From IMG/VR virus record IMGVR_UViG_3300030385_002649, positions 62,001 through 126,000 of that record: DNA of 64,000 nt; one strand, 5' to 3'. The notes below the pieces were generated by a model, which saw only the letters and a list, made by a program, of their open reading frames with translations, was not told the DNA's origin and did not search any database. The translations under genes were made by a program, and so were the position numbers. How positions within the stretch are numbered: position 1 is the stretch's first letter; every line of letters begins with the position of its first letter. Below are positions 1,068 through 17,010 of the stretch, in pieces.

Positions 1068-1349
1068 ATGAGAGACACAATGCAAGACCCAATCGTACGG
1101 TACACGTGCGATTGGTGTAAAAAGGTCGACTACGTTCGGAATCTTAAGGACGTCTATAAGAAAACCAGTCCAGAGACGTGGGTTCACAACAACGGGGAGG
1201 GGCCAGGAGAGGATTTCTGCTCCTCCGGGTGTCGATCACAGTCTGAAGTCGCCTGGGAGCAAGGAATAGACGCTGCTCTTAACGCTCAGACTGACAAATG
1301 GGAGACGATCCGAATAGCTAGCGCGCTGGAGCGTCGAGCCTTCAAATGA
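1068..1349 (+). CDS. small Zn-binding hypothetical (CDWC...CSSGC)
   Basis: GGAGGG RBS; paired Cys motifs; ATGA overlap with the next gene. Confidence 0.7.
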   Translation: MRDTMQDPIVRYTCDWCKKVDYVRNLKDVYKKTSPETWVHNNGEGPGEDFCSSGCRSQSEVAWEQGIDAALNAQTDKWETIRIASALERRAFK

Positions 1350-1567
1350 GCAACATGACTACTAATACAAAGACTGATATGCTTAAACTGTTACGACCTG
1401 ATTGGACCGAAGAGGATCTTGCAGTTCATGGCCCTAATTGTAGGTGCGGACATAGCATTTACAACCATGAGGGCGGTCAATGGCCTATGGAACAATGTTG
1501 TTATCTTGATTGCGATTGTATTACCAACGCTACGTGGTTATCAAGCACGATTAAATGGGAGGCTTAA
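1346..1567 (+). CDS. CxC/W-x-S microprotein family member (73 aa)
   Basis: CRCGHSIYNH...CCYLDCDC...WLSSTI; ATGA-coupled. Confidence 0.7.
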   Translation: MSNMTTNTKTDMLKLLRPDWTEEDLAVHGPNCRCGHSIYNHEGGQWPMEQCCYLDCDCITNATWLSSTIKWEA

Positions 1568-1620: not shown

Positions 1621-2718
1621 ATGAAACTGGAATCAAGACCATACCAGGAACGGATCCACGCTAAAGCGTTGGGTTTCCTGGAGACTGACACCGGTAACGT
1701 AACCAACTCCGTAATGATCGAATCCCCCACAGGGTCCGGCAAAACCATTATGGGGTTGAAACTTGTCCAGCACCTAGCTGAGCAAGGTATGAACATTGGG
1801 TGGGTTGCGCACAGACGCGAACTTCTCAAACAAGCGATGGGCGCTAACAGGGACTTCTTTGGAATCGAAGGAGTTGAGTATATCTCGCTGTTTACTCGTC
1901 AACCACAGCAATACGCCCATTGCGACGTGATCGTGGTTGACGAGTGCCAGCACGACGCTAGCAAAACAGCAACAATGCTGCACGACGTGATCCGTCCTAA
2001 GATCATTATTGGGTTGTCAGCTACACCCTATAGAACTGACAACGCTCAGTTGTGCTTCTCTAGGGTCATTAGGGACGCTGGAATTCACCAGCTAATCCGA
2101 GAGGGCTTCCTTGCCGAATTTAAGCAATGGATTGTCGAGGACGATTGGACGCCAGAAGTGGTGGCTAATACTTATCTTCAGCAACCTGAGATTTGGGGCA
2201 AGTCGGTCATTTACTTCTTGACTAAGGACGACGCTGAAGCTTGTAACGCTATCTTGGAAGCTAACGGCGTTCGGTCCGGTTGCGTGGTTGGTGATAAGCC
2301 TCGTGACCACCTTTTGGAGGGCTTTCATGGCGACACTCTTGACGTGTTGACAAACGTTATGGTTCTTACTGAGGGTTTCGATTATCCTGCTTTGCAGACT
2401 GTATTTGTTAGGCCCTCTTCGCGGGGTCCGACTGTGCAAATGGCTGGGCGTGGGTTTCGGATTTATCCCGGTCAGGACAGCATCAATATCGTCCAGTCTA
2501 GAGCCACCAAGTATCCGTTCACTCGTCATGCCCGTCCATTGGAGCAGTGGCAGAGACTCCACGGAAAATGGCGAAACGTGAGCCCTAAGGATCTAGCACC
2601 TTTGTTCAAGTCGCAGATCGCGAGAGTCTCTGACGCCCAGGTTGCGTTACCCACTTTTCTGACCAAGCAAATGGGCAAGAAGAACATTTTTGCAAGTATC
2701 ATGGGCCCTCAGAAGTGA
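1621..2718 (+). CDS. SF2 DExH helicase (ResIII/UvsW-like)
   Basis: Walker A PTGSGKT, DECQH, SAT, TEGFD, QMAGRGFR motifs. Confidence 0.93.
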   Translation: MKLESRPYQERIHAKALGFLETDTGNVTNSVMIESPTGSGKTIMGLKLVQHLAEQGMNIGWVAHRRELLKQAMGANRDFFGIEGVEYISLFTRQPQQYAHCDVIVVDECQHDASKTATMLHDVIRPKIIIGLSATPYRTDNAQLCFSRVIRDAGIHQLIREGFLAEFKQWIVEDDWTPEVVANTYLQQPEIWGKSVIYFLTKDDAEACNAILEANGVRSGCVVGDKPRDHLLEGFHGDTLDVLTNVMVLTEGFDYPALQTVFVRPSSRGPTVQMAGRGFRIYPGQDSINIVQSRATKYPFTRHARPLEQWQRLHGKWRNVSPKDLAPLFKSQIARVSDAQVALPTFLTKQMGKKNIFASIMGPQK

Positions 2719-2725
2719 ACCCAGA

Positions 2726-2766
2726 CTCCCAGTGTCGCCATTGCGAATATGGGGGCCTTTTTTGTT
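2726..2766 (+). terminator. probable intrinsic terminator after the helicase
   Basis: Imperfect stem CTCCCAGTGTCGC-catt-GCGAATATGGGGG followed by CCTTTTTTGTT. Confidence 0.55.
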
Positions 2767-2903
2767 CCCATTGCATGAATTGTATGAGGGACAATTGCTT
2801 TTGGTATTCTTCAGTTTTAATTCAGAAGAATTACTTTTACTCAACCAAACAATTAACGAGGCCAACATATGAGCGACCAAAACAAGTCTAAAGGAAAACG
2901 ACA

Positions 2904-4061
2904 ATGAGTAACAACATGCAGGACCGGACGGTATCAACTCTCCGATCAGAAGGGCTGACCTTTGGCGAGCATTATGTCAAGCTAGGAGACGTGCTTTGTC
3001 GCAAGACTAAGGACTACAACGAAAAGGCCGGGGCAGGAAGTCGCAACAACCTCCTCAGTACCGCACTCGAATGGAGCAATAGCACTTTCTTCCCAAGCGG
3101 ACGATTCTGGCTCTCATTCTGTGCTAAAGTTGGAATTAGCCCGAGTGTTTTCAACCTTTTCACCCATGAGGAAGTGTTCAACCGTTGCCGAGATCGAAAC
3201 AAGGTCAGCGAGAGCGGCAATATCCGAATCGTAGAGGAAAAGAAGAGCAAAGACCTCCTAGCTATCAGCGATCCCAGCAAGGGCATTATTCATTGGGAGA
3301 ACGCCTATAAGATCGTGGAAGAGAAAAAGGGAACTGGAGTTTATTACAACGAAGGTGTTGTCTCTTCTCTTCACAGGCTCCAGAACGATACCCCGGTCCG
3401 AGTTGGGATTGAGGATTATGAGCCTCGGATTCAGGTCATGATTCCGATTGACGGTTATGGTTCCCCTACTGTCTATCTGGCTCTGGTCAGAAAGGCCAAC
3501 AACGCTGTGATCGTTGCTATGGGCAAGGCTTTCAAGTCTACGGTCAAGGTGTCTAAGAAGAAGAAAGCTGATCCGATTGAATTCTCTTTGGAGCGCATGT
3601 TCGATTCGTTCAGTAATGACGAGGGTTTCGACGCTCTAATCCGACGAATGGACGCTGCTCGCCACGCTCCTTTGTCAGTTCGGGAGTTTCATGAGATTCA
3701 GAAGATCTTGTCCAATCTCCCTAGGGATATTCGGGCTCAGAATGAGATTGATCGAATGATCCGTCCTGAGGTTCGGTTCTTCAACCGTCTAGCTGGCGAT
3801 CTTCACTTGAAGTATGGGCTTGCTCACCTTCAGGAAATGACTGAGAAGCAAATGGGCTTGCTGGAGACTGATATCTCTGTGTATGAGGCTTTCAACTTTA
3901 TCTCAGAATTGACCACTCACCACCTTGATTATCAGAACAATTCTGAGGCTAACGTTGCTGGAAAACTTCAGTCTTGGATTGGTCGTGTTTTGGCTCGTGC
4001 TTATGACCTTGAGGGCACGATCTCCCAGCCTAAGAAGAGCTACCTAGACCGTTACCTGTAA
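2904..4061 (+). CDS. DUF932/DUF945-like hypothetical protein (385 aa)
   Basis: LAISDPSK and PIDGYGSPTVYLALVR segments resemble, from memory, a DUF932-type family seen in planctomycetes; not searched. Confidence 0.5.
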   Translation: MSNNMQDRTVSTLRSEGLTFGEHYVKLGDVLCRKTKDYNEKAGAGSRNNLLSTALEWSNSTFFPSGRFWLSFCAKVGISPSVFNLFTHEEVFNRCRDRNKVSESGNIRIVEEKKSKDLLAISDPSKGIIHWENAYKIVEEKKGTGVYYNEGVVSSLHRLQNDTPVRVGIEDYEPRIQVMIPIDGYGSPTVYLALVRKANNAVIVAMGKAFKSTVKVSKKKKADPIEFSLERMFDSFSNDEGFDALIRRMDAARHAPLSVREFHEIQKILSNLPRDIRAQNEIDRMIRPEVRFFNRLAGDLHLKYGLAHLQEMTEKQMGLLETDISVYEAFNFISELTTHHLDYQNNSEANVAGKLQSWIGRVLARAYDLEGTISQPKKSYLDRYL

Positions 4062-4240
4062 TGGTTGATCTAAGCGAAGTTCCCTGGATTTGTAGGTGTA
4101 CCCATGAATGGGAGGATCACACCTACGACACTTCGCCTGGCTTTTGGGCTCCTCGGGGCTGTGAAGTTGAACACTGCATCTGTGACAACTGGCAACCCTG
4201 GCTTTCATGGCAAGTTTATTACGATTGGATTTCGAGATGA
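4061..4240 (+). CDS. CxC/W-x-S microprotein (59 aa), not in ORF track
   Basis: MVDLSEVPWICRCTHEWEDHTYDTSPGFWAPRGCEVEHCICDNWQPWLSWQVYYDWISR*; TAATG overlap upstream, ATGA overlap downstream. Confidence 0.75.
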   Translation: MVDLSEVPWICRCTHEWEDHTYDTSPGFWAPRGCEVEHCICDNWQPWLSWQVYYDWISR

Positions 4241-6172: not shown

Positions 6173-7462
6173 ATGAGCACAGTAACAGAACAACACATGC
6201 TAATCTTCACAGATATCGACAATAACAATAACAAGTTTTGGGAGGGCGTCTTAAAGGATGACAACACTCTTACTTGTCGATGGGGACGGGTTGGAGAACG
6301 AGGACAAAGCCGCGATTTCTCCGGAGGAGCCAAGAAATTGGCAGCCAAGTTGCGTGAGAAAAAGCGCAAGGGCTATGAAGAGGCCATGATCCTTAAAGAG
6401 ACCGGCCCTGCAGTTAGTGTTGGGAAGAGCCGACTTAAAAAGGTCGCGGCCAAGCAGATTGATCACGGATCGTGCGCGGAAACATCAACTCTCATTGAAT
6501 TCCTGGTTAAAGTCAACCGACACCAAATTTCTGCTGCCTCTGGTGGTAAGATTTTCATCGATGACGACGACGGGCTGATCAGAACTCCTCTTGGGGTTGT
6601 CAACCAGGAAGCTATCGATGCTGCTCGGATCTTCCTCACGGACATTGGCGATTGCGTCCAAGTTAAGTCCTACACTACTAAAAAATGGAAGGAAGCGGTC
6701 AACAAGTTCACTAGGCTTATCCCCCAGGACGTCGGTCGTGGTAGGGGGTGGGATAAGAAACTCTTCCCTAACATCTCGGCTGTTCGAAAGCAGAATGATT
6801 TGTTGGATTCGCTGCAGACCACTCTCACTCACGTCTTGGATAACCCTGCCAAGACTAAAGCTGATGCGAAGGAGGAAGATGTCTTCAAGGTTAAGCTTGT
6901 CCCGTTGACTGATGATAAAGTTCTTTCTCACATTAGGAGCTTCTATTATAAGAGTGTGAAGAAGATGCACTCTAGTTATGGGATGAAAATCAGCCGAGCA
7001 TGGGTCGTGGACATCGAGACGATGCGTAAAAAGTACGAAACTGATGGGGCGGGGCTGAGCAACGTCTGGGAGCTTTGGCACGGTACAAAGGCTTCGAACG
7101 TCCTCTCCATCTTAAAGGGTGGCCTGGTTATTCCCCCATCAACAGCAGGTCACGTATGTGGTCGGATGTTCGGCGATGGTCTTTACTTCTCTGACCAGAG
7201 CACGAAGTCTTTGAACTATGCTACTGGTTATTGGGACGGGTCGTCGGAGGAACGTTGTTTCATGTTCATGTCGGACGTGGCGATGGGCGAGACTTACGTT
7301 CCTAAGTCGACCTATTGGGGTCAATCTAACACTAAGAGTTGTCCTAAGGGCTATGATAGCACGTTCGCTAAGGCTAACGTTTCTGGCGTTCAGAATAACG
7401 AAATGATCGTTTATAGGACTTCTCAGGCTAACTTGAGATTTCTCGTTGAATTCGTCCGTTAA
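6173..7462 (+). CDS. poly(ADP-ribose) polymerase-like protein (WGR + regulatory + catalytic)
   Basis: WGR domain (CRWGRVGERGQ...EKKRKGY), helical regulatory region, catalytic LWHGT, MFGDGLYFSDQSTKSLNY, NNEMIVY. Confidence 0.93.
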   Translation: MSTVTEQHMLIFTDIDNNNNKFWEGVLKDDNTLTCRWGRVGERGQSRDFSGGAKKLAAKLREKKRKGYEEAMILKETGPAVSVGKSRLKKVAAKQIDHGSCAETSTLIEFLVKVNRHQISAASGGKIFIDDDDGLIRTPLGVVNQEAIDAARIFLTDIGDCVQVKSYTTKKWKEAVNKFTRLIPQDVGRGRGWDKKLFPNISAVRKQNDLLDSLQTTLTHVLDNPAKTKADAKEEDVFKVKLVPLTDDKVLSHIRSFYYKSVKKMHSSYGMKISRAWVVDIETMRKKYETDGAGLSNVWELWHGTKASNVLSILKGGLVIPPSTAGHVCGRMFGDGLYFSDQSTKSLNYATGYWDGSSEERCFMFMSDVAMGETYVPKSTYWGQSNTKSCPKGYDSTFAKANVSGVQNNEMIVYRTSQANLRFLVEFVR

Positions 7463-7601
7463 GTGGAGATGCAAATGGTGTGGATACCCCTGGGAACACA
7501 TTAACTCAGACGTTACTTGGAAATGCTCGCCAGAAAATTGTTACAATTACAGAATTTGGTTCTCTTATAATGTGCAAATAGACAGGCCATTCCCGGTATG
7601 A
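7446..7601 (+). CDS. Cys/His microprotein, array 1 member A (51 aa, TTG start), not in ORF track
   Basis: MNSSVKWRCKWCGYPWEHINSDVTWKCSPENCYNYRIWFSYNVQIDRPFPV*; overlaps the PARP stop by 17 nt; ATGA overlap with the next ORF. Confidence 0.6.
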   Translation: MNSSVKWRCKWCGYPWEHINSDVTWKCSPENCYNYRIWFSYNVQIDRPFPV

Positions 7602-7753
7602 GCGCGTTTAATGATGCTTTTCAGGATTGTAAGTGTGGCACGGTTTGGCATCATTTCCACGTCGGGTTTCACTGCTGGCATAGTTACCAAATTCGAGCCT
7701 GGAGAATAGAACTTTATGAAGAAGACGCAGGAATTGTGATCGATGGCTTGTAA
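7598..7753 (+). CDS. Cys/His microprotein, array 1 member B (51 aa), not in ORF track
   Basis: MSAFNDAFQDCKCGTVWHHFHVGFHCWHSYQIRAWRIELYEEDAGIVIDGL*. Confidence 0.75.
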   Translation: MSAFNDAFQDCKCGTVWHHFHVGFHCWHSYQIRAWRIELYEEDAGIVIDGL

Positions 7754-7754
7754 T

Positions 7755-7889
7755 GTGATTGATAATTTTCCTTGTCGGTGCGGACCGGATCCTGATCATT
7801 TCCAAGAAAATTGCTGGTACAGCTACCAAATCAAGTTCTGGGAAGCACCGATCAAGGTTTACCCTTTAATTAGTGGGGAAAAGATCTGA
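7755..7889 (+). CDS. Cys/His microprotein, array 1 member C (44 aa, GTG start), not in ORF track
   Basis: MIDNFPCRCGPDPDHFQENCWYSYQIKFWEAPIKVYPLISGEKI*; TGATG overlap with 7889. Confidence 0.75.
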   Translation: MIDNFPCRCGPDPDHFQENCWYSYQIKFWEAPIKVYPLISGEKI

Positions 7890-8188
7890 TGGAGATAGGT
7901 ATTGACCTTTTCCCGTGTTCTAATCTTATTTCGGGGGACAAAGACATGCTGAAAGATGAAGTTCTCACGTTGTGCAGATGTAAGGAGGAAAGCATCACCC
8001 ATTGGGAAGAAAATTGCTGGTATAGTTATCAACTTCCCAGGTGGTCTAAGGGTGTTGTCCGGCACGATCATTTGAGGTGTGACTTCCCGGCGTGGGCTCG
8101 GCTGTTGGTTGAGGCTCGTGGTAGAGTTGAGGATCCTGCGATTGCGATGGACAAATTGTTGATGGAATTTGAAACTCATGGTTTGTAG
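7889..8188 (+). CDS. Cys/His microprotein, array 1 member D (99 aa)
   Basis: LCRCKEESITHWEENCWYSYQLPRW core plus a C-terminal helical extension. Confidence 0.75.
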   Translation: MEIGIDLFPCSNLISGDKDMLKDEVLTLCRCKEESITHWEENCWYSYQLPRWSKGVVRHDHLRCDFPAWARLLVEARGRVEDPAIAMDKLLMEFETHGL

Positions 8189-8324
8189 ATGCCATTATGA
8201 AGTGTCGATGGTCCATTGGGGGAAAACTTGTTGGATTTCTTATCGAATCCCTAGATATAGGAAGACCGTTAGATTGGATTATCCAACAATTCATCGGCTT
8301 AACAAAGTGAAGGACTTATTATGA
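8178..8324 (+). CDS. Cys/His microprotein, array 1 member E (48 aa), not in ORF track
   Basis: MVCRCHYEVSMVHWGKTCWISYRIPRYRKTVRLDYPTIHRLNKVKDLL*; 11-nt overlap with D. Confidence 0.72.
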   Translation: MVCRCHYEVSMVHWGKTCWISYRIPRYRKTVRLDYPTIHRLNKVKDLL

Positions 8325-8372: not shown

Positions 8373-8975
8373 ATGGCGGTTACTGCTAACAAGGAACAAT
8401 TTGTGCTCATCTACACGAGCAACAAGAATCACGACAACCTGGTTTACCAAGTCGACAACGTGCATCGTGGGGTGTACCACTTGCGCTGTGTCGAGACTAG
8501 TCGGGTTATCAAGGCTCATAAGAGCCGTATTAGGAAAGTTCTATCCGAGGAGGAAATGATGAACGGAACTGGCGTTATTGAAGATACCGAGGTTGTCAAC
8601 GAGTCGACGACCACGGACAACATCGAAGTGAAGGCTCTAGAGGAAACTGACGAGACAATCGAGGCGATCAAGCCAAAGGCTAAGGTCAAGAAGACTAAAG
8701 CCCAAGCTATCCCCTTCGACTTCGATCAGTTCAAGACCGATGGTTACGAGATTTGGGTTAAGTCCGATCTTGAGTTCGACATCGAGAATGTTAAGGTTGA
8801 CGCGATCTGCCTCATCTACCCGGATGAGGCCAGTTACGAGACTTTCAACATCTACAACGGTTCTCTCGGAAAGAAGGGGTCTCGCGGTCAGAACTATAAG
8901 TTCACCGAGAAGAACACCATCGAGAGGAAGCGTAAGCAGCTGGGCAAGAAGGGCTACACCCAACGTAGCAACTAA
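8373..8975 (+). CDS. hypothetical protein, possible degenerate C-terminal WGR-like domain
   Basis: Strong AGGAGG RBS. C-terminus GKKGSRGQNYKF...KRKQLGKKGY parallels the PARP WGR GRVGERGQSRDF...KLREKKRKGY. Confidence 0.7.
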   Translation: MAVTANKEQFVLIYTSNKNHDNLVYQVDNVHRGVYHLRCVETSRVIKAHKSRIRKVLSEEEMMNGTGVIEDTEVVNESTTTDNIEVKALEETDETIEAIKPKAKVKKTKAQAIPFDFDQFKTDGYEIWVKSDLEFDIENVKVDAICLIYPDEASYETFNIYNGSLGKKGSRGQNYKFTEKNTIERKRKQLGKKGYTQRSN

Positions 8976-8992
8976 TGACACCAGCCAAGTGT

Positions 8993-9027
8993 GGGCGCCC
9001 GGGAGGAACAAACCCTCCCGGGCGCCC
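8993..9027. repeat. perfect 14-bp GC-rich inverted repeat (hairpin), 7-nt loop, no U-tract
   Basis: GGGCGCCCGGGAGG-aacaaac-CCTCCCGGGCGCCC. Confidence 0.85.
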
Positions 9028-9031
9028 TCGT

Positions 9032-9133
9032 ATGCTTAGAAACCATAAAGGAAGGTCCTGGCACAGTTTCTGGGTCACCTTAAAAAGGAACATGGATGCG
9101 ATGTACGGCATCGTACGGGTTACGAACTTGTGA
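9032..9133 (+). CDS. possible degenerate W-x-S microprotein (33 aa)
   Basis: MLRNHKGRSWHSFWVTLKRNMDAMYGIVRVTNL*; WHSFWV resembles WYSFWI at 13748. Confidence 0.3.
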   Translation: MLRNHKGRSWHSFWVTLKRNMDAMYGIVRVTNL

Positions 9134-9212
9134 GAATCTCTGGACCAGTTATCGAATTTATTATCTAAAAAATAATTCTTTTGTAATTAGTGCCAGGTCT
9201 CGGCGATTATAA
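9096..9212 (+). CDS. possible degenerate W-x-S microprotein (38 aa)
   Basis: MRCTASYGLRTCENLWTSYRIYYLKNNSFVISARSRRL*; ENLWTSYRI resembles ENCWYSYQI; AAGGA upstream. Confidence 0.4.
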   Translation: MRCTASYGLRTCENLWTSYRIYYLKNNSFVISARSRRL

Positions 9213-9357
9213 ATTCGCAAGCTGTACCAGGACCATCTGTTTGTTCCTATCCCTCGTGATCCCATGGTAGTGATTCTCTAGGAAATTCGAAAACATCTTC
9301 AGAGTTCAAGAGTTCTCTGAAAACAGCGGATTTGGAAGAAATGAGGAGTAGACGCCA

Positions 9358-9675: not shown

Positions 9676-10002
9676 ATGACTGAAACCATTGAACAAACCG
9701 GCACTGTAACCACCACAGACACGGACACCGAAACCCAAGGTAAGAGCGGCTACTATCCAAAGTGGGTCGTCATTTTCCACAATGACGATGGCACTGCCTA
9801 TGATTTCGTCGTCGGGGTTCTCGTCAAGTTCTTCAACAAAGCAATGAAAGACGCCCAGCAATTAGCCGAGGAAGTCCACAAGAACGGTCAAGGCGTTGCT
9901 GGGATTTTCCCTAAGGAACAAGCTGAATTCCGCTCCCATGAGACGATGAAACTCGCCCGAGAACACGGTTATCCCCTGCAACTCTCGGTTGAGCCTGAGT
10001 GA
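9676..10002 (+). CDS. clpS: ATP-dependent Clp protease adaptor ClpS
   Basis: WVVIFHNDD..YDFVVGVL..FF...EVHKNGQG...YPLQLSVEPE; N-degron pocket NDD/H retained. Confidence 0.92.
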   Translation: MTETIEQTGTVTTTDTDTETQGKSGYYPKWVVIFHNDDGTAYDFVVGVLVKFFNKAMKDAQQLAEEVHKNGQGVAGIFPKEQAEFRSHETMKLAREHGYPLQLSVEPE

Positions 10003-10004
10003 GA

Positions 10005-10172
10005 ATGAAGTTCTTATCGCCAGAATGGTGGAAAAACGATCCTTCCTCAACTTGTCGTTGTGGATCACCGCTGAGCATCAACTCAATTGCTACGTGTCCT
10101 TGTGGGTCTATAGCGTGGTTCTCGGCGGAAATACTTAGTGAGGTCAGGTTTTACAACCGATTGGTCCATTAA
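10005..10172 (+). CDS. CRCG/W-x-SA microprotein, array 2 member A (55 aa), not in ORF track
   Basis: MKFLSPEWWKNDPSSTCRCGSPLSINSIATCPCGSIAWFSAEILSEVRFYNRLVH*; 2 nt after the clpS stop; TAATG overlap with the next ORF. Confidence 0.78.
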   Translation: MKFLSPEWWKNDPSSTCRCGSPLSINSIATCPCGSIAWFSAEILSEVRFYNRLVH

Positions 10173-10381
10173 TGTCGTTGTTCGAAAAAGTGACGCATCA
10201 TGACATTGAAGAATGGTTCACTAACTGGAAAGACCCTGCTGAAATGTGCCGGTGTGGGTATAGTCTATATGATCATACTATGCAGAGTCATTTTCATGCT
10301 TGGTATTCCGCAGAAATACTTAGTGATGAACAGTTCAATGAAAATATGAGTGAAAATATGAACGCGAAATCGAACAAATGA
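10172..10381 (+). CDS. CRCG/W-x-SA microprotein, array 2 member B (69 aa)
   Basis: WKDPAEMCRCGYSLYDH...HAWYSAEILSDEQF. Confidence 0.78.
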   Translation: MSLFEKVTHHDIEEWFTNWKDPAEMCRCGYSLYDHTMQSHFHAWYSAEILSDEQFNENMSENMNAKSNK

Positions 10382-10590
10382 GCGACGCATGGAAACGGAC
10401 ATGGAAAGACCCAGCCAAAATTTGTAGATGCGGCAGCCTTGTGATGGTACCATGGCACAGACACAAACCGTGGATTTCTGCTATCATTTTAAGCGACATT
10501 CAATTCTACAAGATTTATGACATGAAAACGGTTAGGCTCAGAATAAATGAAACTCATCCCATCGATTATAAAAGACCTTCTAAAAGATAG
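10378..10590 (+). CDS. CRCG/W-x-SA microprotein, array 2 member C (70 aa)
   Basis: WKDPAKICRCGSLVMVPWHRHKPWISAIILSDIQFY; ATGA overlap. Confidence 0.78.
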   Translation: MSDAWKRTWKDPAKICRCGSLVMVPWHRHKPWISAIILSDIQFYKIYDMKTVRLRINETHPIDYKRPSKR

Positions 10591-10885
10591 CTGCGAGCTA
10601 GAGGTAGAGGTTCTAGACTGTGGGTGGGTTTCAGACTTGCTAACGCATCTATACGTTCCAGCGGCAGAAATGGACATTGAGATTAGCCTGAATGAAGGAC
10701 TTATCAATGTCCAAGCATGGGGCGACGACAGTGTTTATAATTGTAGAGTATTTGACCCTCACGACATAGAGTTCATAGACGATCTAAGAGAATACTTGAT
10801 TCCTATGTGCGAAAACCATGAAGTACACATGAGGTACCCAGATGAAAAAAGCGGAAATAATCCAGAAGCTAGTAAAACACCTTAA
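10547..10885 (+). CDS. hypothetical protein (112 aa)
   Basis: Fills the gap before ligA; weak resemblance to the 147..542 frame (IIKDLLKDSCELEV vs IIRGWLQETCPDLTV). Confidence 0.65.
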   Translation: MKLIPSIIKDLLKDSCELEVEVLDCGWVSDLLTHLYVPAAEMDIEISLNEGLINVQAWGDDSVYNCRVFDPHDIEFIDDLREYLIPMCENHEVHMRYPDEKSGNNPEASKTP

Positions 10886-12779
10886 CCGTTGCGACCTAGC
10901 CTATTACAACCAAACCCCACTCATCAGCGACCAAGACTACGACAAACTCCGAGACAAGCTAACCAGCCTAGACCCAAGCAACCCCTTCCTCGCAAAAGTT
11001 GGGGCTCCCGTCGTCACCACGGACGGACGAAGCAAGCACACACATAAATCGCTCATCGGGTCCCTTGCCAAGTGCAAGACCAAAGAAGAGTTCATGAAAT
11101 GGGCCGAGGGAAAGGGCCCCCTGTGCGTCAGCTACAAGTATGATGGCAGTACAGTAGTCGCCACCTACGAAAGCGGTACGCTGAAAACTCTAGCGACCCG
11201 TGGCGATGGCACCATCGGAGAAGATATCACGGACAATGCCGACCTGATAGGCTCAAAATCCAACACTTACCATTTCATCCCGAAGCAACTTACCTCCGAT
11301 TTTACCGGAGAAATCCGAGGCGAAGCTATCCTGCGTTTAGGTCGGTTTGAAGAGTTCTTCAAGCCCGCTGGTTACAAAAACGCCCGCAACGCCGCCAACG
11401 GAAAAGTCCGCGATATGAAGCGCGACGACCTGATCAAATGGTTGGAAGTGGTGTGGTTCGATATCATCCCCGAGGACCGTGATGTCAAGACTGAGGGAGA
11501 GAAATGGGCTCTCATCCAGGAACTTGTCAACGATGATCGCCCCACCACTAAGAGTCTCGCTATGGCTCAGATCCAGACTGACGCCGAGAAGGCATGGGAG
11601 ATCTTCGAGGAGGTCGGCAAGCTTAGGTCCGGCTTGGACTTTGAGATTGACGGTATAGTCGTCAAGGTAAACGATATTGATGACCAAGAGTCCTTCGGTG
11701 TCACTAGTAACCGGCCCAATGGGGCTATCGCTATCAAGTTCCCCTCTTTGGGAGCAGAAACCTTTTTGGAGAGTATCGAATGGAATCGTGGATTGACAGG
11801 GGTTTACGCCCCGACCGGGATCCTCAAGTCGGTAGATATCGGCGGAGTGACCATAGGAAGAGTCTCCCTGTGCGGCATGGACGAGATCCGCAGGTTGAAG
11901 ATCGCCCCAGGAGACAAGGTCTACATCACCCGGCGAAATGACGTCATCCCCAAGGTTGAATATGTCATCAATCGGACCCCACAGCCGGGGACCATCCGAA
12001 CTCCAGTTAAAGCACCTAAGACGTGTAATGAGTGTGACGCCGACCTGATCCAGAACGGATCCTACCTGATCTGCCGAAACCCGGACTGCCAGGGAGAGAT
12101 TTTCGGTAGTCTCATGACCTGGATTCAGCGTTTGAAGATTAAAGGGCTAGGGTCTTCAGTGCTCCGGTCCCTCATCGACGAGGGCGTCACGGACATCTGC
12201 AAGCTCTACGAAGCTCAAGAGGAAGTCTATGAAAAAGCAACAAGATCCTCAAAGCTTGCAGCTAAGCTCTACGCATCCGTGCAATCAACAACGGAAGTTA
12301 GACTTGGTACTTTCTTATCAGGGCTCTGTATACCGTCTCTCGGGGCTACAAACGGTACGCGGTTGGAAAAGCGATTTAATACGCTTGAAGCAGTTGTCGC
12401 AGCATCCGAAGAAGACCTGGAAGGAGTACCGGGCATCAAAACAAATGCTAAGAAAATCAGAGCAGGACTTGACGCTAAATCCGATCTAATCGAAGGATTA
12501 GCTAAGATCCTAACGATCAAGACTCTAGACACTAGTGGGCCTCTAGCTGGACACACTGTCTGTGTCACCGGGGATTTAACCGTCCCAAGGTCTAAGTTCC
12601 AAGATTGGATTAGGTCTCTAGGAGGGGAAGTTAAGTCGGGCGTCTCTAAGGACCTATCGTATCTTATAACTAACGCTCCTGCAAGCGGCACTTCTAAGAA
12701 CAAGAAAGCGGACAAGTATGGTGTCAGAAAGTGTACTGAAACGGATTTCTATAGTCTTATCGGGTCCTCGCCAGCCTAA
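10842..12779 (+). CDS. ligA: NAD-dependent DNA ligase
   Basis: KYDG adenylation motif, TRGDG, EIRGE, DGIVVK, AIKF, C4 Zn finger, HhH repeats, C-terminal BRCT (VCVTG...GGEVKSGVSKDLSYLI). Confidence 0.96.
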   Translation: MKKAEIIQKLVKHLNRCDLAYYNQTPLISDQDYDKLRDKLTSLDPSNPFLAKVGAPVVTTDGRSKHTHKSLIGSLAKCKTKEEFMKWAEGKGPLCVSYKYDGSTVVATYESGTLKTLATRGDGTIGEDITDNADLIGSKSNTYHFIPKQLTSDFTGEIRGEAILRLGRFEEFFKPAGYKNARNAANGKVRDMKRDDLIKWLEVVWFDIIPEDRDVKTEGEKWALIQELVNDDRPTTKSLAMAQIQTDAEKAWEIFEEVGKLRSGLDFEIDGIVVKVNDIDDQESFGVTSNRPNGAIAIKFPSLGAETFLESIEWNRGLTGVYAPTGILKSVDIGGVTIGRVSLCGMDEIRRLKIAPGDKVYITRRNDVIPKVEYVINRTPQPGTIRTPVKAPKTCNECDADLIQNGSYLICRNPDCQGEIFGSLMTWIQRLKIKGLGSSVLRSLIDEGVTDICKLYEAQEEVYEKATRSSKLAAKLYASVQSTTEVRLGTFLSGLCIPSLGATNGTRLEKRFNTLEAVVAASEEDLEGVPGIKTNAKKIRAGLDAKSDLIEGLAKILTIKTLDTSGPLAGHTVCVTGDLTVPRSKFQDWIRSLGGEVKSGVSKDLSYLITNAPASGTSKNKKADKYGVRKCTETDFYSLIGSSPA

Positions 12780-12824: not shown

Positions 12825-13748
12825 ATGGCCCTCGGATTATGCTGCCAATGGTTAGAAATCAAAAAAGGCAAACCAAAGAATGTGCTCATAAGCAGAAGTC
12901 TTCAATTGGGCCGTTTTAACAGAGGTGAATATAGTCGAGAAAAGATCAAGAAGACATTTATAGACAACCTTCAAAATGTCTTAGACGTTATGCCTAAGAT
13001 TGTAGCATCTGGGGTTCGTTCTCTACGCATTAGCAGTTCAATGTTTCCTCTTTTTGATAAAGTTGACAAAGAATTGGCTGAAAATAAAGAAACCGATTTG
13101 TTACTTGCTGAAATAGGTTCAATGGCATTAATCAATGGCGTTAGAATCACCACTCATCCCGCTCAGTTTACAGTTATTTCAAGCGATAACCCAAAAGTGG
13201 TTGATAATTCTATCCGAGAATTGGAGTATCACGCTTGGATGTTCGATAAAATGGGGCTTCCACAAACCCCTCATTATAGCATCAACATCCATGGAGGTAA
13301 AAGGGACCGAAAAACGCAATTGATATCAGGAATTGAACGTCTTAATGACTCAACTCGTCTCCGCTTAACCTTAGAGAATTGTGAATTTGCGTACAGTGTT
13401 AAAGATTTAGCGTTAGTTGCGAAGGACGTAAAAGTTCCCATTTGTTTTGATAGTCACCATCATCGATTTAACTCTTCGGACCTGTCTGGTGAAAAAGCCA
13501 TGGGTATAGCGATAAAAAGCTGGCCATCCGGCAGCAAACCCATGACCCATTTAAGCAATTCCAAACCAGAATATGTAGAAACTGATTCCGTCACTAAATT
13601 ACGAAAGCATAGTGATTATTTACATCAAGTTCCAGAATATCAATTAAAAGCTAACAACGATGGGTTGATTGATATAGAAATTGAAGCTAAAATGAAAAAC
13701 CTCGCCATCTTTAAAGCTGTAAATGATTTTGGTTTACAGCTTAATTAA
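12825..13748 (+). CDS. uvsE: UV-damage endonuclease (UvsE/UvdE)
   Basis: LGLCC, RISSSMFP, RITTHPAQF, NIHGG, LTLENCE, CFDSHHH, HSDY, IEIEAKMK. Confidence 0.93.
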   Translation: MALGLCCQWLEIKKGKPKNVLISRSLQLGRFNRGEYSREKIKKTFIDNLQNVLDVMPKIVASGVRSLRISSSMFPLFDKVDKELAENKETDLLLAEIGSMALINGVRITTHPAQFTVISSDNPKVVDNSIRELEYHAWMFDKMGLPQTPHYSINIHGGKRDRKTQLISGIERLNDSTRLRLTLENCEFAYSVKDLALVAKDVKVPICFDSHHHRFNSSDLSGEKAMGIAIKSWPSGSKPMTHLSNSKPEYVETDSVTKLRKHSDYLHQVPEYQLKANNDGLIDIEIEAKMKNLAIFKAVNDFGLQLN

Positions 13749-13906
13749 TGCAAAACTCTACAGTCTCATCGGGTCCTCGCCAGCCTGATAGGCGTAAAAG
13801 AGGCGAATCACCACCGCCGGGTTCAAGATGGTATTCATTTTGGATCCGCCGCAAAAGGAAAAGACTTCGAGATGGACCTATTCGACGATTGTTACTGGGG
13901 GAATAA
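13748..13906 (+). CDS. possible basic W-x-S microprotein (52 aa), not in ORF track
   Basis: MQNSTVSSGPRQPDRRKRGESPPPGSRWYSFWIRRKRKRLRDGPIRRLLLGE*; TAATG overlap with uvsE; lacks Cys. Confidence 0.45.
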   Translation: MQNSTVSSGPRQPDRRKRGESPPPGSRWYSFWIRRKRKRLRDGPIRRLLLGE

Positions 13907-14063
13907 ACAAAAACGCAAGGAATACTACAAGAAATATGTTGAAGGCTGGAAGACCAGACCGTGCTCGGCCTGTGCCGGATCTGGCCATTACGACAGGGGC
14001 GGAAGCCCAAAATGCCAAGGCTGTGAACCGCCAGGGTCTGGAAAAGAAAGATATAAGCCATGA
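13872..14063 (+). CDS. small DnaJ-type Zn-finger protein
   Basis: CSACAGSG...CQGC..PGSG; ATGA overlap with 14060. Confidence 0.65.
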   Translation: MDLFDDCYWGNKQKRKEYYKKYVEGWKTRPCSACAGSGHYDRGGSPKCQGCEPPGSGKERYKP

Positions 14064-14662
14064 AGCTTAAAGCTGCCTTGAAAAGCGAACAAAACCTCAA
14101 GTGCGCAATTTGCAAAGACAATGACGATGGTCTTATGCTATGCGCTAAGTGCAACACTGTTCAGCACGCTTCATGCATGATCGAATTTAAAGGCTGTTCT
14201 GGCTGTGGAAATAGCGACCCTCATGCCGAGAAGCCTGCCAAAAAGAAAACAGAAACCAAAACGAGCAGTGCTCACACTTTGTCTAGACAGGATTCAGGTG
14301 TGCTCTGCGACCCCTCATTCGGTTATTGTCATTATCCAATGGGAACGCAACATTTTTGTCCATACCACAGAATTACGACGACCGATGATTATCAAGTTCC
14401 TAAAAGGAATGATGGGCCGCACGGATCACACAGACCGTGTCGGTCTTGTGGTCCCCACACTTATTCTCCTGGCGACATGCAGTCTAAAAGAACACACGGT
14501 TGCTGCTGTTGCTCCTGTTGGCGTTATAGGTCCTCAGAAGAACGAGACCGAGTCATGCCAGAGATGGAGATATCTGGCATGTTTGTTAATGCCGCTAAGC
14601 TATTCGTTTTTTCACTAATAGTTTTCTCTCTTGCGGACCTCCTTGTGGCGTTAAGTATCTAA
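14060..14662 (+). CDS. prokaryotic RING-like finger protein with C-terminal TM helix
   Basis: CAIC...LMLCAKCNTVQHASCMIEFKGCSGC fits the Prok-RING_1 pattern; extra Cys/His clusters; hydrophobic C-terminus. Confidence 0.6.
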   Translation: MKLKAALKSEQNLKCAICKDNDDGLMLCAKCNTVQHASCMIEFKGCSGCGNSDPHAEKPAKKKTETKTSSAHTLSRQDSGVLCDPSFGYCHYPMGTQHFCPYHRITTTDDYQVPKRNDGPHGSHRPCRSCGPHTYSPGDMQSKRTHGCCCCSCWRYRSSEERDRVMPEMEISGMFVNAAKLFVFSLIVFSLADLLVALSI

Positions 14663-14681: not shown

Positions 14682-15083
14682 ATGGAAGACCCAGGCCAAA
14701 TCGTCACTTTAATGGATTACCAACAGTTCTGCGACCAGAGATCGGGATACGAATTCTCAGCTCTGATTGGTCGAGGCGACCCGTGCTTACAAGTTGGGCA
14801 CGAGTTGGTTTATAATTCATTAGGTCTAGCTGGGGAAGCTGGGGAGTTCGTCGAGAAGATTAAAAAGGCCATTCGTATGGCCAACATCGACAGTTTTTAC
14901 GGTACCATCGACGATGAAAAAAGATTGGCTTGCCTAAAGGAATTAGGGGATGTGATGTATTATGTCTCTCGGTGCGCCAATCTTTTAGACTCTAGCTTGG
15001 AAGAGGTCGCTGAAATCCACAAGGTAAAGCTCCTAGACCGGATTGAGCGTGGAGTTGTTAAGGGAGAAGGCGATGACCGATAA
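14682..15083 (+). CDS. MazG-like nucleotide pyrophosphohydrolase
   Basis: GLAGEAGEFVEKIKK...KELGDVMYY...KLLDRIERGVVKGEGDDR. Confidence 0.9.
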   Translation: MEDPGQIVTLMDYQQFCDQRSGYEFSALIGRGDPCLQVGHELVYNSLGLAGEAGEFVEKIKKAIRMANIDSFYGTIDDEKRLACLKELGDVMYYVSRCANLLDSSLEEVAEIHKVKLLDRIERGVVKGEGDDR

Positions 15084-15747: not shown

Positions 15748-15950
15748 CATTGGGTGAAGTAACCAAAGCATTATCAGCTTTGAGGGATAAGCTTCCAAAC
15801 GACCCGGACTTAAAAGTTAGGTTAATTGGTCACGACGACAGTTTTCATTTCGCGCCAACTTATGAAATTCTGGTGACTGACGGGGAAGTGGTGCTCAGCG
15901 GAGTGCCACCAGAGTTGGCGAAAGCATATGGCCTCGATGAGCGTAACTGA
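15744..15950 (+). CDS. hypothetical protein (68 aa)
   Basis: Coupled ORF in the + strand run. Confidence 0.6.
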   Translation: MTLGEVTKALSALRDKLPNDPDLKVRLIGHDDSFHFAPTYEILVTDGEVVLSGVPPELAKAYGLDERN

Positions 15951-17010
15951 ATACACCTATGCACCTTATAGGTTCCAACATGCCTCAGCCGTGTGCGCAT
16001 TAAAAGAACCAGCTAAAAACCACGGGTCCCAAAAATCGGGGGCCCTGGTTGCGTTTTACGCAGGGTTATCCGAATGCCACGAGTCTCAGCACGTCTGCCT
16101 AGCCTTCAACGGTGAAGTGTTCCACGAGCTAGAGCCGTACACTGGCAATCCTGTTCTTTTCTCCACAAGCGAGACAGAAGCTGTTCTAATTTACTCCAAG
16201 TTCGAAGACTTGCCAGCAAACAGGATAAGATGGTGGCAATATTGTTCCCTGTGGGCCCGCAAGATTTCCACCCTGGACGATGGAGTGCTTTGCGTTTCAG
16301 ACCCTGAGCAGATCATAGTGGAAATGGAAGACCTCCCAACAGGAAAAGGTCTTCTTACTAGGTGCCACCCTGTCAAGACAGAAATCCCGGGGTTCACAGA
16401 AGAAAAGTGGTGCTTACCAGTCTATCGTGAACACGACCCAACCCACCACGGTGCTCTCCTGATCAGCGATGACGGGTTTAAATGGGAAACCCATAGTCTT
16501 ATTGGGCACGATTCCACCTCCAATAGGGGCCTTCCCATTAGAAGCATCCAACCTACCTTCTGGAAGCAGAATGGAGAATTGCACGCTCTACTTCGAAACT
16601 TCAATTATTCGAGCAAGGGCCCTAGATTGGCTTATCATTCTAGGCTTGATGCAGACGGAAAATGGAAGCCTCTTGTAGAGTCCACACTCTACAATGCTAA
16701 TAATAGCTTAGTGGTCTTGCCCCACAATGACCGCAGTTTTGTGCTATGGAACCATGACCCTAAAGGCAGAAATAACTTGTTTCTTGGAGTGTTGAACACG
16801 CATGGTACAGGGGTTCCAAACGGTGGAGTGATTGCTAAAGTTTCTGATTATGGCCATTACCCTTCGATGGCTGTTATCGAGGGGAAGTTGCACATATTGT
16901 TCACAACTTCGATAGCTCACGTTGATTCCTTCACAGCCAAGTCATGCATCAAACATCGCATTTTCGACTTGGACTCAATGGAAATGTTTTTAAAAGCTAA
17001 GGGATTCTAA
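15928..17010 (+). CDS. BNR/Asp-box sialidase-like beta-propeller
   Basis: ISDDGFKWE Asp-box, IQPT...GELHALLR, RNNL, YPSMAVIEGKLHILFT. Confidence 0.65.
   Translation: MASMSVTEYTYAPYRFQHASAVCALKEPAKNHGSQKSGALVAFYAGLSECHESQHVCLAFNGEVFHELEPYTGNPVLFSTSETEAVLIYSKFEDLPANRIRWWQYCSLWARKISTLDDGVLCVSDPEQIIVEMEDLPTGKGLLTRCHPVKTEIPGFTEEKWCLPVYREHDPTHHGALLISDDGFKWETHSLIGHDSTSNRGLPIRSIQPTFWKQNGELHALLRNFNYSSKGPRLAYHSRLDADGKWKPLVESTLYNANNSLVVLPHNDRSFVLWNHDPKGRNNLFLGVLNTHGTGVPNGGVIAKVSDYGHYPSMAVIEGKLHILFTTSIAHVDSFTAKSCIKHRIFDLDSMEMFLKAKGF

What the first reader, a model, noticed from the sequence alone, without database searches (positions are those of the whole stretch)
7446..8324. Hidden five-gene tandem array of C3H microproteins translationally coupled to the PARP
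Seen: the apparent gap after the PARP is tiled by five ORFs (7446, 7598, 7755, 7889, 8178). They join by a 17-nt overlap, ATGA, a 1-nt gap, TGATG and an 11-nt overlap. Four are missing from the ORF track. Cores align: DCKCGTVWHHFHVGFHCWHSYQI, PCRCGPDPDHFQENCWYSYQI, LCRCKEESITHWEENCWYSYQL, VCRCHYEVSMVHWGKTCWISYRI, and a longer CKWC..EH..ENC...WFSY. The conserved Ser uses TCT in two and AGY in three, so conservation is at protein level, not a DNA repeat. Inference: a CxC-H-C Zn module forming an operon with the PARP, as PAR readers, specificity adaptors or inhibitors that protect the phage from its own enzyme. This is my top candidate for an undescribed system.
Basis: partly seen in the sequence, partly recalled or inferred. 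Interest (0 to 1): 0.88.

Follow-up and report, generated by a model that had tools for sequence, protein, structure and literature searches.

The report
Hidden zinc-type microprotein family in jumbo phage
The five small genes after the phage PARP gene are real, but they belong to a family of about 14 cysteine/histidine-rich microproteins spread over 23 kb of early genes, with no relatives found elsewhere and nothing tying them to the PARP.

Summary
Window 7446-8324 is tiled by five same-strand ORFs sharing a CxC...H...C-W-x-S-Y core. The strict motif occurs 4 times against 0 in 200 shuffles. Conservation is at protein level: about half of identical residues use different codons, and the invariant Ser is TCT, AGT, AGC, AGT, TCT.

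The PARP (WGR + regulatory + catalytic domains, H-Y-E triad intact) is real and m1 overlaps its last 17 nt.

The PARP-specific reading is not supported. The same module recurs after ClpS (9999-10590, three genes), at 1346-1567 and 4061-4240, and in four more copies up to 12 kb upstream of the window. These sit beside unrelated genes. Six other PARP-encoding phage loci have no such ORFs; the closest has a NUDIX gene in that position. Overlapping stop/start junctions are the norm in this early region.

No homologue appeared in 1.84 billion representative proteins, IMG/VR, JGI metagenomes, 50,697 phage genomes, 185,579 prokaryotic genomes, Pfam, PHROGs or PDB. AlphaFold models were poor.

Best reading: a lineage-specific, diversifying family of about 50-85-aa, probably single-zinc proteins in a marine 371-kb jumbo phage, mostly missed by gene callers, likely early-infection binding factors. 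Function is untested.

The parts
6173..7462 (+). PARP-like gene (429 aa): WGR, PARP regulatory and PARP catalytic domains, with the H-Y-E triad present. It is the upstream neighbour of the array, not shown to be a functional partner.
   Evidence: Pfam WGR 2.5e-14, PARP_reg 3.9e-8, PARP 5.1e-27. In the alignment to human PARP1 catalytic domain, LWHGT, GDGLYF and NNEMIVY align to the H, Y and E positions.
7446..7601 (+). m1, 51 aa, the weakest member. It has a CxxC first dyad and a longer spacer ending ...ENC...IWFSY. Its only start is TTG, 17 nt inside the PARP gene, in the +1 frame relative to PARP.
   Evidence: Leave-one-out rank 1, E 2.7e-4 with the whole-family HMM, but rank 55 with the m2-m5 HMM. 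No Shine-Dalgarno sequence.
7598..7753 (+). m2, 51 aa, core CKCG...H...HCWHSYQI. ATGA junction with m1.
   Evidence: Leave-one-out rank 1, E 4.9e-5.
7743..7889 (+). m3, 48 aa (44 aa if it starts at GTG 7755), core CRCG...H....NCWYSYQI.
   Evidence: Leave-one-out rank 1, E 1.7e-8. BLASTP to m4 gives 3e-9.
7889..8188 (+). m4, 99 aa (80 aa from ATG 7946), same core plus a C-terminal tail of about 45 aa with two predicted helices (68-97). It is the only array member called by public gene callers.
   Evidence: P0004. Leave-one-out rank 1, E 1.7e-9. AF2 shows helices in the tail but mean pLDDT is 53.
8178..8324 (+). m5, 48 aa from ATG 8178 (51 aa from TTG 8169), core CRC...H....TCWISYRI. It overlaps m4 by 11 nt.
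   Evidence: Leave-one-out rank 1, E 4.4e-9. BLASTP to m4 gives 1e-11.
9999..10172 (+). n1, 55-57 aa, first gene of a second tandem array directly after ClpS. Core CRCG...CPC....AWFSAEILS.
   Evidence: BLASTP to n2 gives 1e-8. Not called by the public gene callers.
10172..10381 (+). n2, 69 aa, core CRCG...H....HFHAWYSAEILS.
   Evidence: P0001. hhalign of the n profile against the m profile gives P 2e-4 and against the a profile 4e-5.
10378..10590 (+). n3, 70 aa, core CRCG...HRH..WISAIILS. ATGA junction with n2.
   Evidence: (P0002).
1346..1567 (+). a1, 73 aa, longer 'a-type' member: CRCGH....H...C...CDC.....WLS. It overlaps the stop of the preceding 93-aa gene.
   Evidence: BLASTP to n2 gives 1.3e-4.
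4061..4240 (+). a3, 59 aa, a-type member overlapping the stop of the 385-aa gene. Not called by gene callers.
2715..2891 (+). a2, doubtful member (GTG start, CxxC dyads, ...NCFWYSS).
   Evidence: Motif seen, but leave-one-out rank is 270.
9096..9212 (+). Possible decayed copy (...RTCENLWTSYRIYY) in the 382-nt gap between 8975 and 9358. It lacks the CxC dyad.
   Evidence: HMM E 0.08-0.1. BLASTP to m3 gives E 0.045. Weak.

Best explanation
**What it is.** The five ORFs are genuine genes. They form one tandem cluster of a lineage-specific family with three subtypes: m (after PARP), n (after ClpS) and a (four sites).
- The family has about 14 members of about 50-85 aa (one of 99 aa).
- The members are scattered over about 23 kb of the same-strand early-gene region of an uncultivated marine 371-kb jumbo phage.

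**Likely structure (inferred).**
- Each protein is built round one small metal site, most likely tetrahedral Zn. It is formed by a CxC knuckle and a second ligand pair (Hx4C, HxH or CxC).
- The second pair lies immediately before an invariant Trp-x-Ser that probably starts a short helix.
- The flanking tails vary freely in length and charge, from -9 to +9.

**Likely function (inferred).** These are small zinc-stabilised binding modules made early in infection. They have diversified by tandem duplication to bind different host or phage macromolecules, in host take-over or anti-defence.

**Relation to the PARP.** The position after the PARP reflects where one round of tandem duplication happened, not a dedicated PARP partnership. 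Overlapping stop/start codons make co-translation with the upstream gene likely for every cluster.

**Shown versus inferred.**
- Shown: the ORFs, protein-level paralogy, the wider distribution, absence near other PARPs, and the lack of homologues.
- Inferred: metal binding, fold, expression and function.
For: **The genes are real.**
- ORFs and junctions.
- Motif and ORF tiling exceed shuffles.
- Leave-one-out HMM ranks.
- Third codon positions differ more than first and second: 0.61 vs 0.52/0.47 in the m group and 0.70 vs 0.42/0.39 in the n group. 47 of 95 and 37 of 66 identical residues use different codons.

**The family is wider than the PARP array.**
- In-window copies.
- Upstream copies were found with HMMs that had not seen them. 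L008 6286-6543 and 5358-5582 were seen. L013 6746-6943 and 6919-7110 scored E 2e-6 to 2e-8.
- There are none in the next 10 kb upstream or in window 11-64 kb.
- Subtype links by profile-profile comparison: m-n P 2e-4, n-a P 4e-5.

**Ligand behaviour.** Only C or H occupies the four candidate positions across subtypes.

**Variable surfaces.** pI ranges from 4.4 to 10.1.

**No PARP synteny.**

**Gene overlaps are general.**

**Early-region context.** rIIA/rIIB-like genes, ligases, ClpS, MazG and UvdE are nearby.
Against: - There is no expression or proteomic evidence.
- Codon-usage scores are neutral.
- Few members have a recognisable Shine-Dalgarno sequence, and m1 depends on a TTG start.
- The three other assemblies compared (a Tara ENA contig; a Logan contig) are 100% identical to the window over the stretches compared, which include the array. 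No orthologues exist either, so purifying selection cannot be measured between genomes.
- The m-to-a link is weak (hhalign P 0.008).
- The m-to-n link is only moderate, so m2-m5 could be an independent invention confined to the PARP locus.
- AlphaFold models are low-confidence (pLDDT 53 and 65) and give no fold match.
- Metal binding is inferred from residue patterns only.
Confidence: 0.6

Rival explanations
1. One reading: the five m-type proteins are dedicated accessory subunits of the PARP. They would act as PAR readers, specificity adaptors, in-trans nucleic-acid sensors or inhibitors, expressed by translational coupling with it.
For: They directly follow the PARP on the same strand with overlapping junctions. 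The m-type core (Hx4C directly before Trp) is found only at this locus. Links from m to the other subtypes are only moderate. The next gene downstream (8373-8975) has a WGR-like C-terminal stretch (E 0.15, weak).
Against: Sister subtypes sit beside unrelated genes. Six other phage PARP loci lack any such ORF. The ligand spacing fits neither the PBZ nor the PARP-type zinc finger, and Pfam finds neither. Gene overlap is generic here.
Confidence: 0.1
2. Small zinc-finger nucleic-acid-binding regulators, SWIM-like or zinc-knuckle-like. These would be paralogous repressors or activators, or RNA binders, that time phage gene expression.
For: The CxC...[CH]x[CH] arrangement followed by a helix resembles the published SWIM signature CxCxnCxH (PMC6130280, PMC5727457; pattern seen). 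Hx4C is also the second half of the retroviral-type zinc knuckle (my own knowledge). Some members are strongly basic (m5 pI 9.9, n3 pI 10.1).
Against: Most members are acidic (pI 4.4-5.7). There is no Pfam hit to SWIM, zf-CCHC or any DNA-binding family even at E 10, and no PDB hit.
Confidence: 0.15
3. Some or all of the ORFs are not translated. They would be a decaying pseudogene array, or chance ORFs left from duplication of one functional gene (the called 99-aa m4).
For: Neutral codon-usage scores. Weak or absent ribosome-binding sites, and a TTG start for m1. Gene callers skip four of the five. A probable decayed copy exists at 9096-9212.
Against: All five frames are intact and tile the region without gaps. 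All candidate ligands plus Trp and Ser are retained while flanking residues and codons diverged. The same holds for nine other copies.
Confidence: 0.1
4. Precursor peptides of a ribosomally synthesised, post-translationally modified Cys-rich product, encoded as a multi-copy array.
For: Tandem small Cys-rich ORFs are typical of such precursor arrays (my own knowledge).
Against: The conserved part is the Cys/His/Trp core rather than a leader with variable cores. No modification enzyme, protease-transporter or radical-SAM gene appears in about 40 kb of called genes. There are no signal or leader features.
Confidence: 0.03

Closest known systems
SWIM zinc-chelating domain (signature CxCxnCxH; Pfam PF04434)
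   Same: Both have a CxC first dyad, a second two-residue-spaced C/H dyad (CxC or HxH in the n and a subtypes) that leads into a probable helix, and a small size.
   Different: The m-type second pair is Hx4C, not CxH. No member hits the Pfam SWIM model even at E 10. The invariant Trp-x-Ser is not a SWIM feature that I know of. SWIM normally occurs inside larger proteins.
PAR-binding zinc finger (PBZ, C2H2 with Cx5Cx6Hx5H spacing) and PARP-type zinc finger (Cx2Cx28-30Hx2C, PF00645)
   Same: Both are small Cys/His metal modules functionally tied to PARPs.
   Different: The spacings do not match (Cx1C, 6-8 residues, H, 4 residues, C), the ligand set differs, and there is no Pfam hit.
CCHC zinc knuckle (Cx2Cx4Hx4C)
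   Same: The ligand set C-C-H-C and the Hx4C second half are the same as in m2-m5.
   Different: The first dyad is CxC rather than Cx2C, the C-to-H spacer is 6-8 rather than 4, and there is no Pfam hit.
Lineage-specific multigene families of small early proteins in large phages and 'dark-matter islands' of small fast-evolving genes (e.g. PMC4158269 for archaea)
   Same: Both show tandem and dispersed paralogues of very small proteins, fast divergence, no homologues outside the lineage, location among early or accessory genes, and frequent omission by gene callers.
   Different: This is a specific new sequence family with a defined Cys/His/Trp/Ser signature and about 14 copies in 23 kb.

Membership tests
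PAR-binding zinc finger (PBZ) | C2H2 ligand set with Cx5Cx6Hx5H spacing and flanking basic/aromatic residues | tested here: not met
   The spacing read from translations is Cx1C-x6-8-H-x4-C. The definition of the PBZ pattern is from my own knowledge.
PARP-type zinc finger (PF00645) | Cx2Cx28-30Hx2C and a match to the Pfam model | tested here: not met
   No Pfam hit at E up to 10 for any of 11 members. The spacing is different.
SWIM (PF04434) | CxCxnCxH signature | tested here: inconclusive
   The CxC dyad is present in all members except m1 and a2. The second dyad is CxC or HxH in the n and a subtypes but Hx4C in m2-m5.
SWIM (PF04434) | Significant match to the family profile or to a solved SWIM structure | tested here: not met
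   No Pfam hit. No PDB sequence hit. Foldseek found nothing, but the model was poor.
CSL zinc ribbon (PF05207) | Match above the Pfam gathering score | tested here: not met
   Only n1 matches, at 13.3 bits against a cutoff of 29.2.
Zinc-binding protein in general | Four conserved C/H ligands in two pairs, with C/H interchange only | tested here: met
   Alignments A2, A4 and A7 have invariant CxC, and the second pair is restricted to C or H.
Zinc-binding protein in general | Measured metal content or ligand geometry in a confident structure | not testable with these tools
   AF2 pLDDT was 53 and 65. No coordinates or metal assays are available.
   Xoo-sp13, XacN1, Klebsiella 05F01, two uncultured huge phages and IMG/VR contig L002 show no family member within 4-20 kb of the PARP.
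   Copies occur at five other sites. The m subtype itself is restricted to the PARP locus.
RiPP precursor array | Neighbouring maturation enzymes; conserved leader and variable core | tested here: not met
   No such Pfam families appear among the called genes of about 40 kb. The conserved part is the Cys-rich core.

The most novel reading that the evidence does not exclude
The m-type array is a trans-acting zinc-finger set for the phage PARP. Eukaryotic PARP1 carries its nucleic-acid-sensing zinc fingers in cis, whereas this phage would supply interchangeable zinc microproteins from the same transcript. Each would direct or restrain ADP-ribosylation towards a different target, or serve as acceptors through the invariant Ser. 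The n and a subtypes would be the same scaffold recruited to other enzymes such as ClpS. More broadly, the family would be a new class of modular zinc 'adaptor' microproteins that gene callers do not see.
Probability: 0.08. Interest if true: 0.8.

Novelty: new variant of a known kind. Interest (0 to 1): 0.4.

Why it matters
If these genes are expressed, about 14 genes of one family are missing or under-annotated in a 23-kb stretch. Nine or ten of them are absent from public gene calls. This shows how standard callers hide families of microproteins in large phage genomes.

A small zinc scaffold with hypervariable tails, duplicated many times in an early region, is a plausible toolkit for binding host factors or defence proteins, and its members would be easy to test singly. 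It does not, on present evidence, reveal a new PARP-based system. Because the family is so far confined to one uncultivated marine phage, its general importance is limited until relatives or a function are found.

Tried and rejected
**Homologue searches (all found only the phage itself or nothing)**
- Word-indexed profile searches of 5.8 billion proteins with A1 and A7.
- Exhaustive HMMER of 1.84 billion representatives with A1.
- IMG/VR pattern scans with the m and n profiles. The a profile was too variable to scan.
- JGI metagenome scan.
- GTDB genome scans.
- tblastn of n2 and m4 against 50,697 phage genomes.

**Family and structure libraries**
- Pfam, PHROGs and PDB sequence searches gave nothing significant.
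- A weak similarity to the USP28 Cys-box (NTCWFSAVIQ) at E about 1 was dismissed as chance.
- Two AlphaFold2 runs gave pLDDT 53 and 65, and Foldseek against PDB gave no match. They are not usable.

**Selection and relatives**
- dN/dS between genomes is impossible, because the other assemblies are 100% identical.
- A search for close relatives of the phage through the neighbouring protease found only the phage itself.

**Other features of the region**
- Megablast of the region against phages found no match, and tblastn of a 1378-aa structural protein found none either.
- Promoter and terminator consensus scans were not above shuffles.
- Rfam found nothing above threshold.
- The codon-usage log-odds test was uninformative.

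**Ideas considered without a dedicated test**
- A +1 frameshift fusing PARP to m1. The m1 frame is open only from 7437, which leaves a 26-nt window, and I noticed no obvious slippery site when reading it. This was not pursued.
- A RiPP-precursor reading. It was rejected for lack of maturation enzymes.
Full report
**Source and setting.** The window is positions 62001-126000 of IMGVR_UViG_3300030385_002649, a 370,804-bp viral contig.
- The same sequence occurs at 100% identity in a Tara Oceans assembly (ERR599373, 137-kb contig), in a JGI Tara scaffold and in a Logan assembly of ERR2752159.
- It is an uncultivated marine jumbo phage. Virion and tail-fibre proteins lie at 40-64 kb, and rIIA/rIIB-like genes lie about 20 kb upstream.
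- The first 16 kb of the window, and about 19 kb upstream of it, form a nearly uninterrupted + strand block of mostly small genes. The block includes a ResIII helicase, an S64-like protease (on the - strand), PARP, ClpS, NAD-dependent ligase, UvdE, MazG, ATP-dependent ligase, Cpn10 and thioredoxin.
- No phage in GenBank is close: megablast gave nothing, and the best PARP identity is 39%.

**The observation.**
- The PARP is genuine. It has WGR, regulatory and catalytic domains, and the H-Y-E catalytic residues align with human PARP1.
- The strict motif C-x-C-x(4-12)-H-x(2-6)-C-W-x-S-Y occurs four times in the window and never in 200 dinucleotide shuffles.
- Same-strand ORF coverage of the region (94%) exceeds all 500 shuffles.
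- In leave-one-out HMM searches of the six-frame translation, each of m2-m5 is the top non-training hit, with E from 5e-5 to 2e-9.
- Conservation is at the protein level. Only one 33-nt stretch repeats at the DNA level. Third codon positions differ most, and half of the identical residues use different codons.
- m1 is the weak member. It has only a TTG start, no ribosome-binding site and a CxxC first dyad, and it is detected only by the whole-family profile.
- Codon-usage scoring is neutral for all five. I regard this as uninformative for peptides this rich in Cys, Trp and His.

**The family is larger than the finding.** A motif scan of the whole window and HMM scans show the same module elsewhere.
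- There is a second tandem array of three genes directly after ClpS (n1-n3, 9999-10590).
- Single genes lie at 1346-1567 (a1) and 4061-4240 (a3). A doubtful copy lies at 2715-2891.
- Walking upstream of the window with the look-up of encoding contigs found four more. These are L008 5358-5582 and 6286-6543, and a tandem pair at L013 6746-6943 and 6919-7110.
- The L013 pair was detected at E 2e-6 to 2e-8 by profiles that had not seen it.
- The next 10 kb upstream has none, and window 11-64 kb has none.

The three subtypes share an invariant CxC, an invariant Trp-x-Ser, and a second ligand pair just before the Trp:

| Subtype | Second ligand pair | Other conserved features |
|---|---|---|
| m | Hx4C | none noted |
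| n | HxH or CxC | none noted |
| a | CxC | two further conserved His and one Cys |

- The n and a subtypes also share an upstream (D/E)W...DP motif.
- Profile-profile comparison gives m-n P 2e-4, n-a P 4e-5 and m-a P 0.008.
- Together with co-location, size and strand, I take this as one family, while noting that the m-to-others link is only moderate.
- Public gene calls include only five of the roughly 14 members: a1, m4, n2, n3 and the 85-aa upstream one.

**The PARP link.** Three tests speak against a dedicated partnership.
- Within this genome the family sits next to unrelated genes at five other sites.
- Six other PARP-encoding phage loci were scanned in six frames with four profiles and a motif, and none has a member. 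They are Xanthomonas phages Xoo-sp13 and XacN1, Klebsiella phage 05F01, two uncultured huge phages and the IMG/VR contig L002.
- L002 carries the closest PARP (41% identity). Its PARP is preceded by a T4-type RNA ligase and followed, with overlap, by a NUDIX gene.
- 1-, 4- and longer overlaps between consecutive genes occur throughout this block. Overlap with the PARP stop is therefore the local norm, not a mark of special coupling.
- The ligand spacing matches neither the PAR-binding zinc finger nor the PARP-type finger, and Pfam finds nothing.

**Homologues and fold.** No homologue was found outside this phage.
- The searches covered 5.8 billion proteins by word index and 1.84 billion representatives by exhaustive HMMER.
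- They also covered IMG/VR, JGI metagenomes, 185,579 prokaryotic genomes and six-frame searches of 50,697 phage genomes.
- Pfam, PHROGs and PDB gave nothing either.
- Caveat: protein databases inherit the gene callers' blindness to such ORFs, and the DNA pattern scans reach only fairly close relatives.
- AlphaFold2 with the shallow family alignments gave pLDDT 53 and 65, and no Foldseek match. The fold is unknown.
- The closest known pattern is the SWIM signature CxCxnCxH (PMC6130280, PMC5727457). This is a resemblance, not a demonstrated membership.

**Mechanism.**
- Shown: intact, tiled, protein-level-conserved paralogues with four C/H positions that interchange only between C and H, an invariant Trp and Ser, and tails that vary from pI 4.4 to 10.1.
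- Inferred: a single structural zinc site holding a mini-domain of about 30-45 residues. The Trp would pack against the knuckle and the Ser would cap a helix.
- Inferred: expression from the early transcript, with re-initiation at overlapping starts.
- Inferred: diversification by tandem duplication to bind different partners during host take-over or counter-defence.
- I give about 0.6 to the combined statement that this is a real, probably zinc-binding, non-PARP-specific family.
- The specific functional guess (protein-binding early factors) deserves less, perhaps 0.35-0.4.

**Verdict.** This is a new sequence family of a familiar general kind: lineage-specific small early proteins of a large phage. 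The hidden genes are notable, but the family is so far confined to one uncultivated phage and has no assigned function. Interest 0.4.

Noticed in passing
L013 6746-7110 (about window -12158 to -11794), L008 5358-5582 and L008 6286-6543 (window -4042 to -2857): Four further a-type family members lie upstream of the window. The L013 tandem pair and L008 5358-5582 lie in stretches where public gene callers report no gene.
   Followed up: yes
window 8373-8975: This 200-aa protein, just downstream of the array, has a strong GAGGAGG ribosome-binding site. Its C-terminal 40 residues align with the WGR core of the neighbouring PARP (G..G.RGQ...F...KKGY; BLASTP E 0.15). Pfam does not detect it. It may be a second, divergent WGR-like protein.
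   Followed up: partly
window 8975-9357: This is a 382-nt stretch with no called gene. It contains two short ORFs with the W-x-S motif but no CxC: 8975-9133 (...SWHSFWV) and 9096-9212 (...TCENLWTSYRIYY). They may be decayed family copies.
   Followed up: partly
L008 4434-4721, 4839-5123, 5579-5662, 9104-9328, 9318-9518: Several Cys-free small ORFs in the same block carry a W-[FY]-S motif, near the C-terminus in most of them (AWFSHQIRY, LWYSHHVF, AWFSFLVW, MWFSYMI, IWYSALL). W[FYILH]S is about 3-fold enriched on the + strand of this 20 kb. Pairwise similarity to the family is weak (E 0.002-0.4). They could be a wider superfamily or chance.
   Followed up: partly
window 14060-14662 and 13872-14063: The first is a 200-aa Cys-rich protein with a weak PHD/prokaryotic-RING-like N-terminus (E 1e-3, below cutoff) and a hydrophobic C-terminus. 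The second is an overlapping-frame 63-aa ORF with a CxxCxGxG-type motif. These are other putative zinc proteins in the same block.
   Followed up: no
window 1068-1349: This 93-aa protein immediately precedes a1. It has two Cys pairs and a sub-threshold zf-FCS match (E 0.0017, 18.6 bits against a cutoff of 22.4).
   Followed up: no
L002 4034-7753: In the closest PARP relative (22-kb IMG/VR contig, 41% identity), the PARP is flanked by a T4 Rnl1-type RNA ligase upstream and an overlapping NUDIX gene downstream. That is a plausible NAD/ADP-ribose module, unlike the context here.
   Followed up: partly
window 7421-7446: A 7-bp stem hairpin (TCTCAGG...CTTGAGA) ends 8 nt before the m1 TTG start, inside the PARP 3' end. 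The m1 frame is +1 relative to PARP and is open only from 7437. A frameshift fusion was considered but nothing supports it.
   Followed up: no
window 9676-10002, 10842-12779, 12825-13748, 14682-15083, 15928-17010; L008 7672-8313: The phage encodes ClpS, an NAD-dependent LigA-type ligase and also an ATP-dependent ligase, UvdE, MazG and a BNR/sialidase-like protein. The NAD-consuming ligase and the PARP lie within 4 kb of each other.
   Followed up: no
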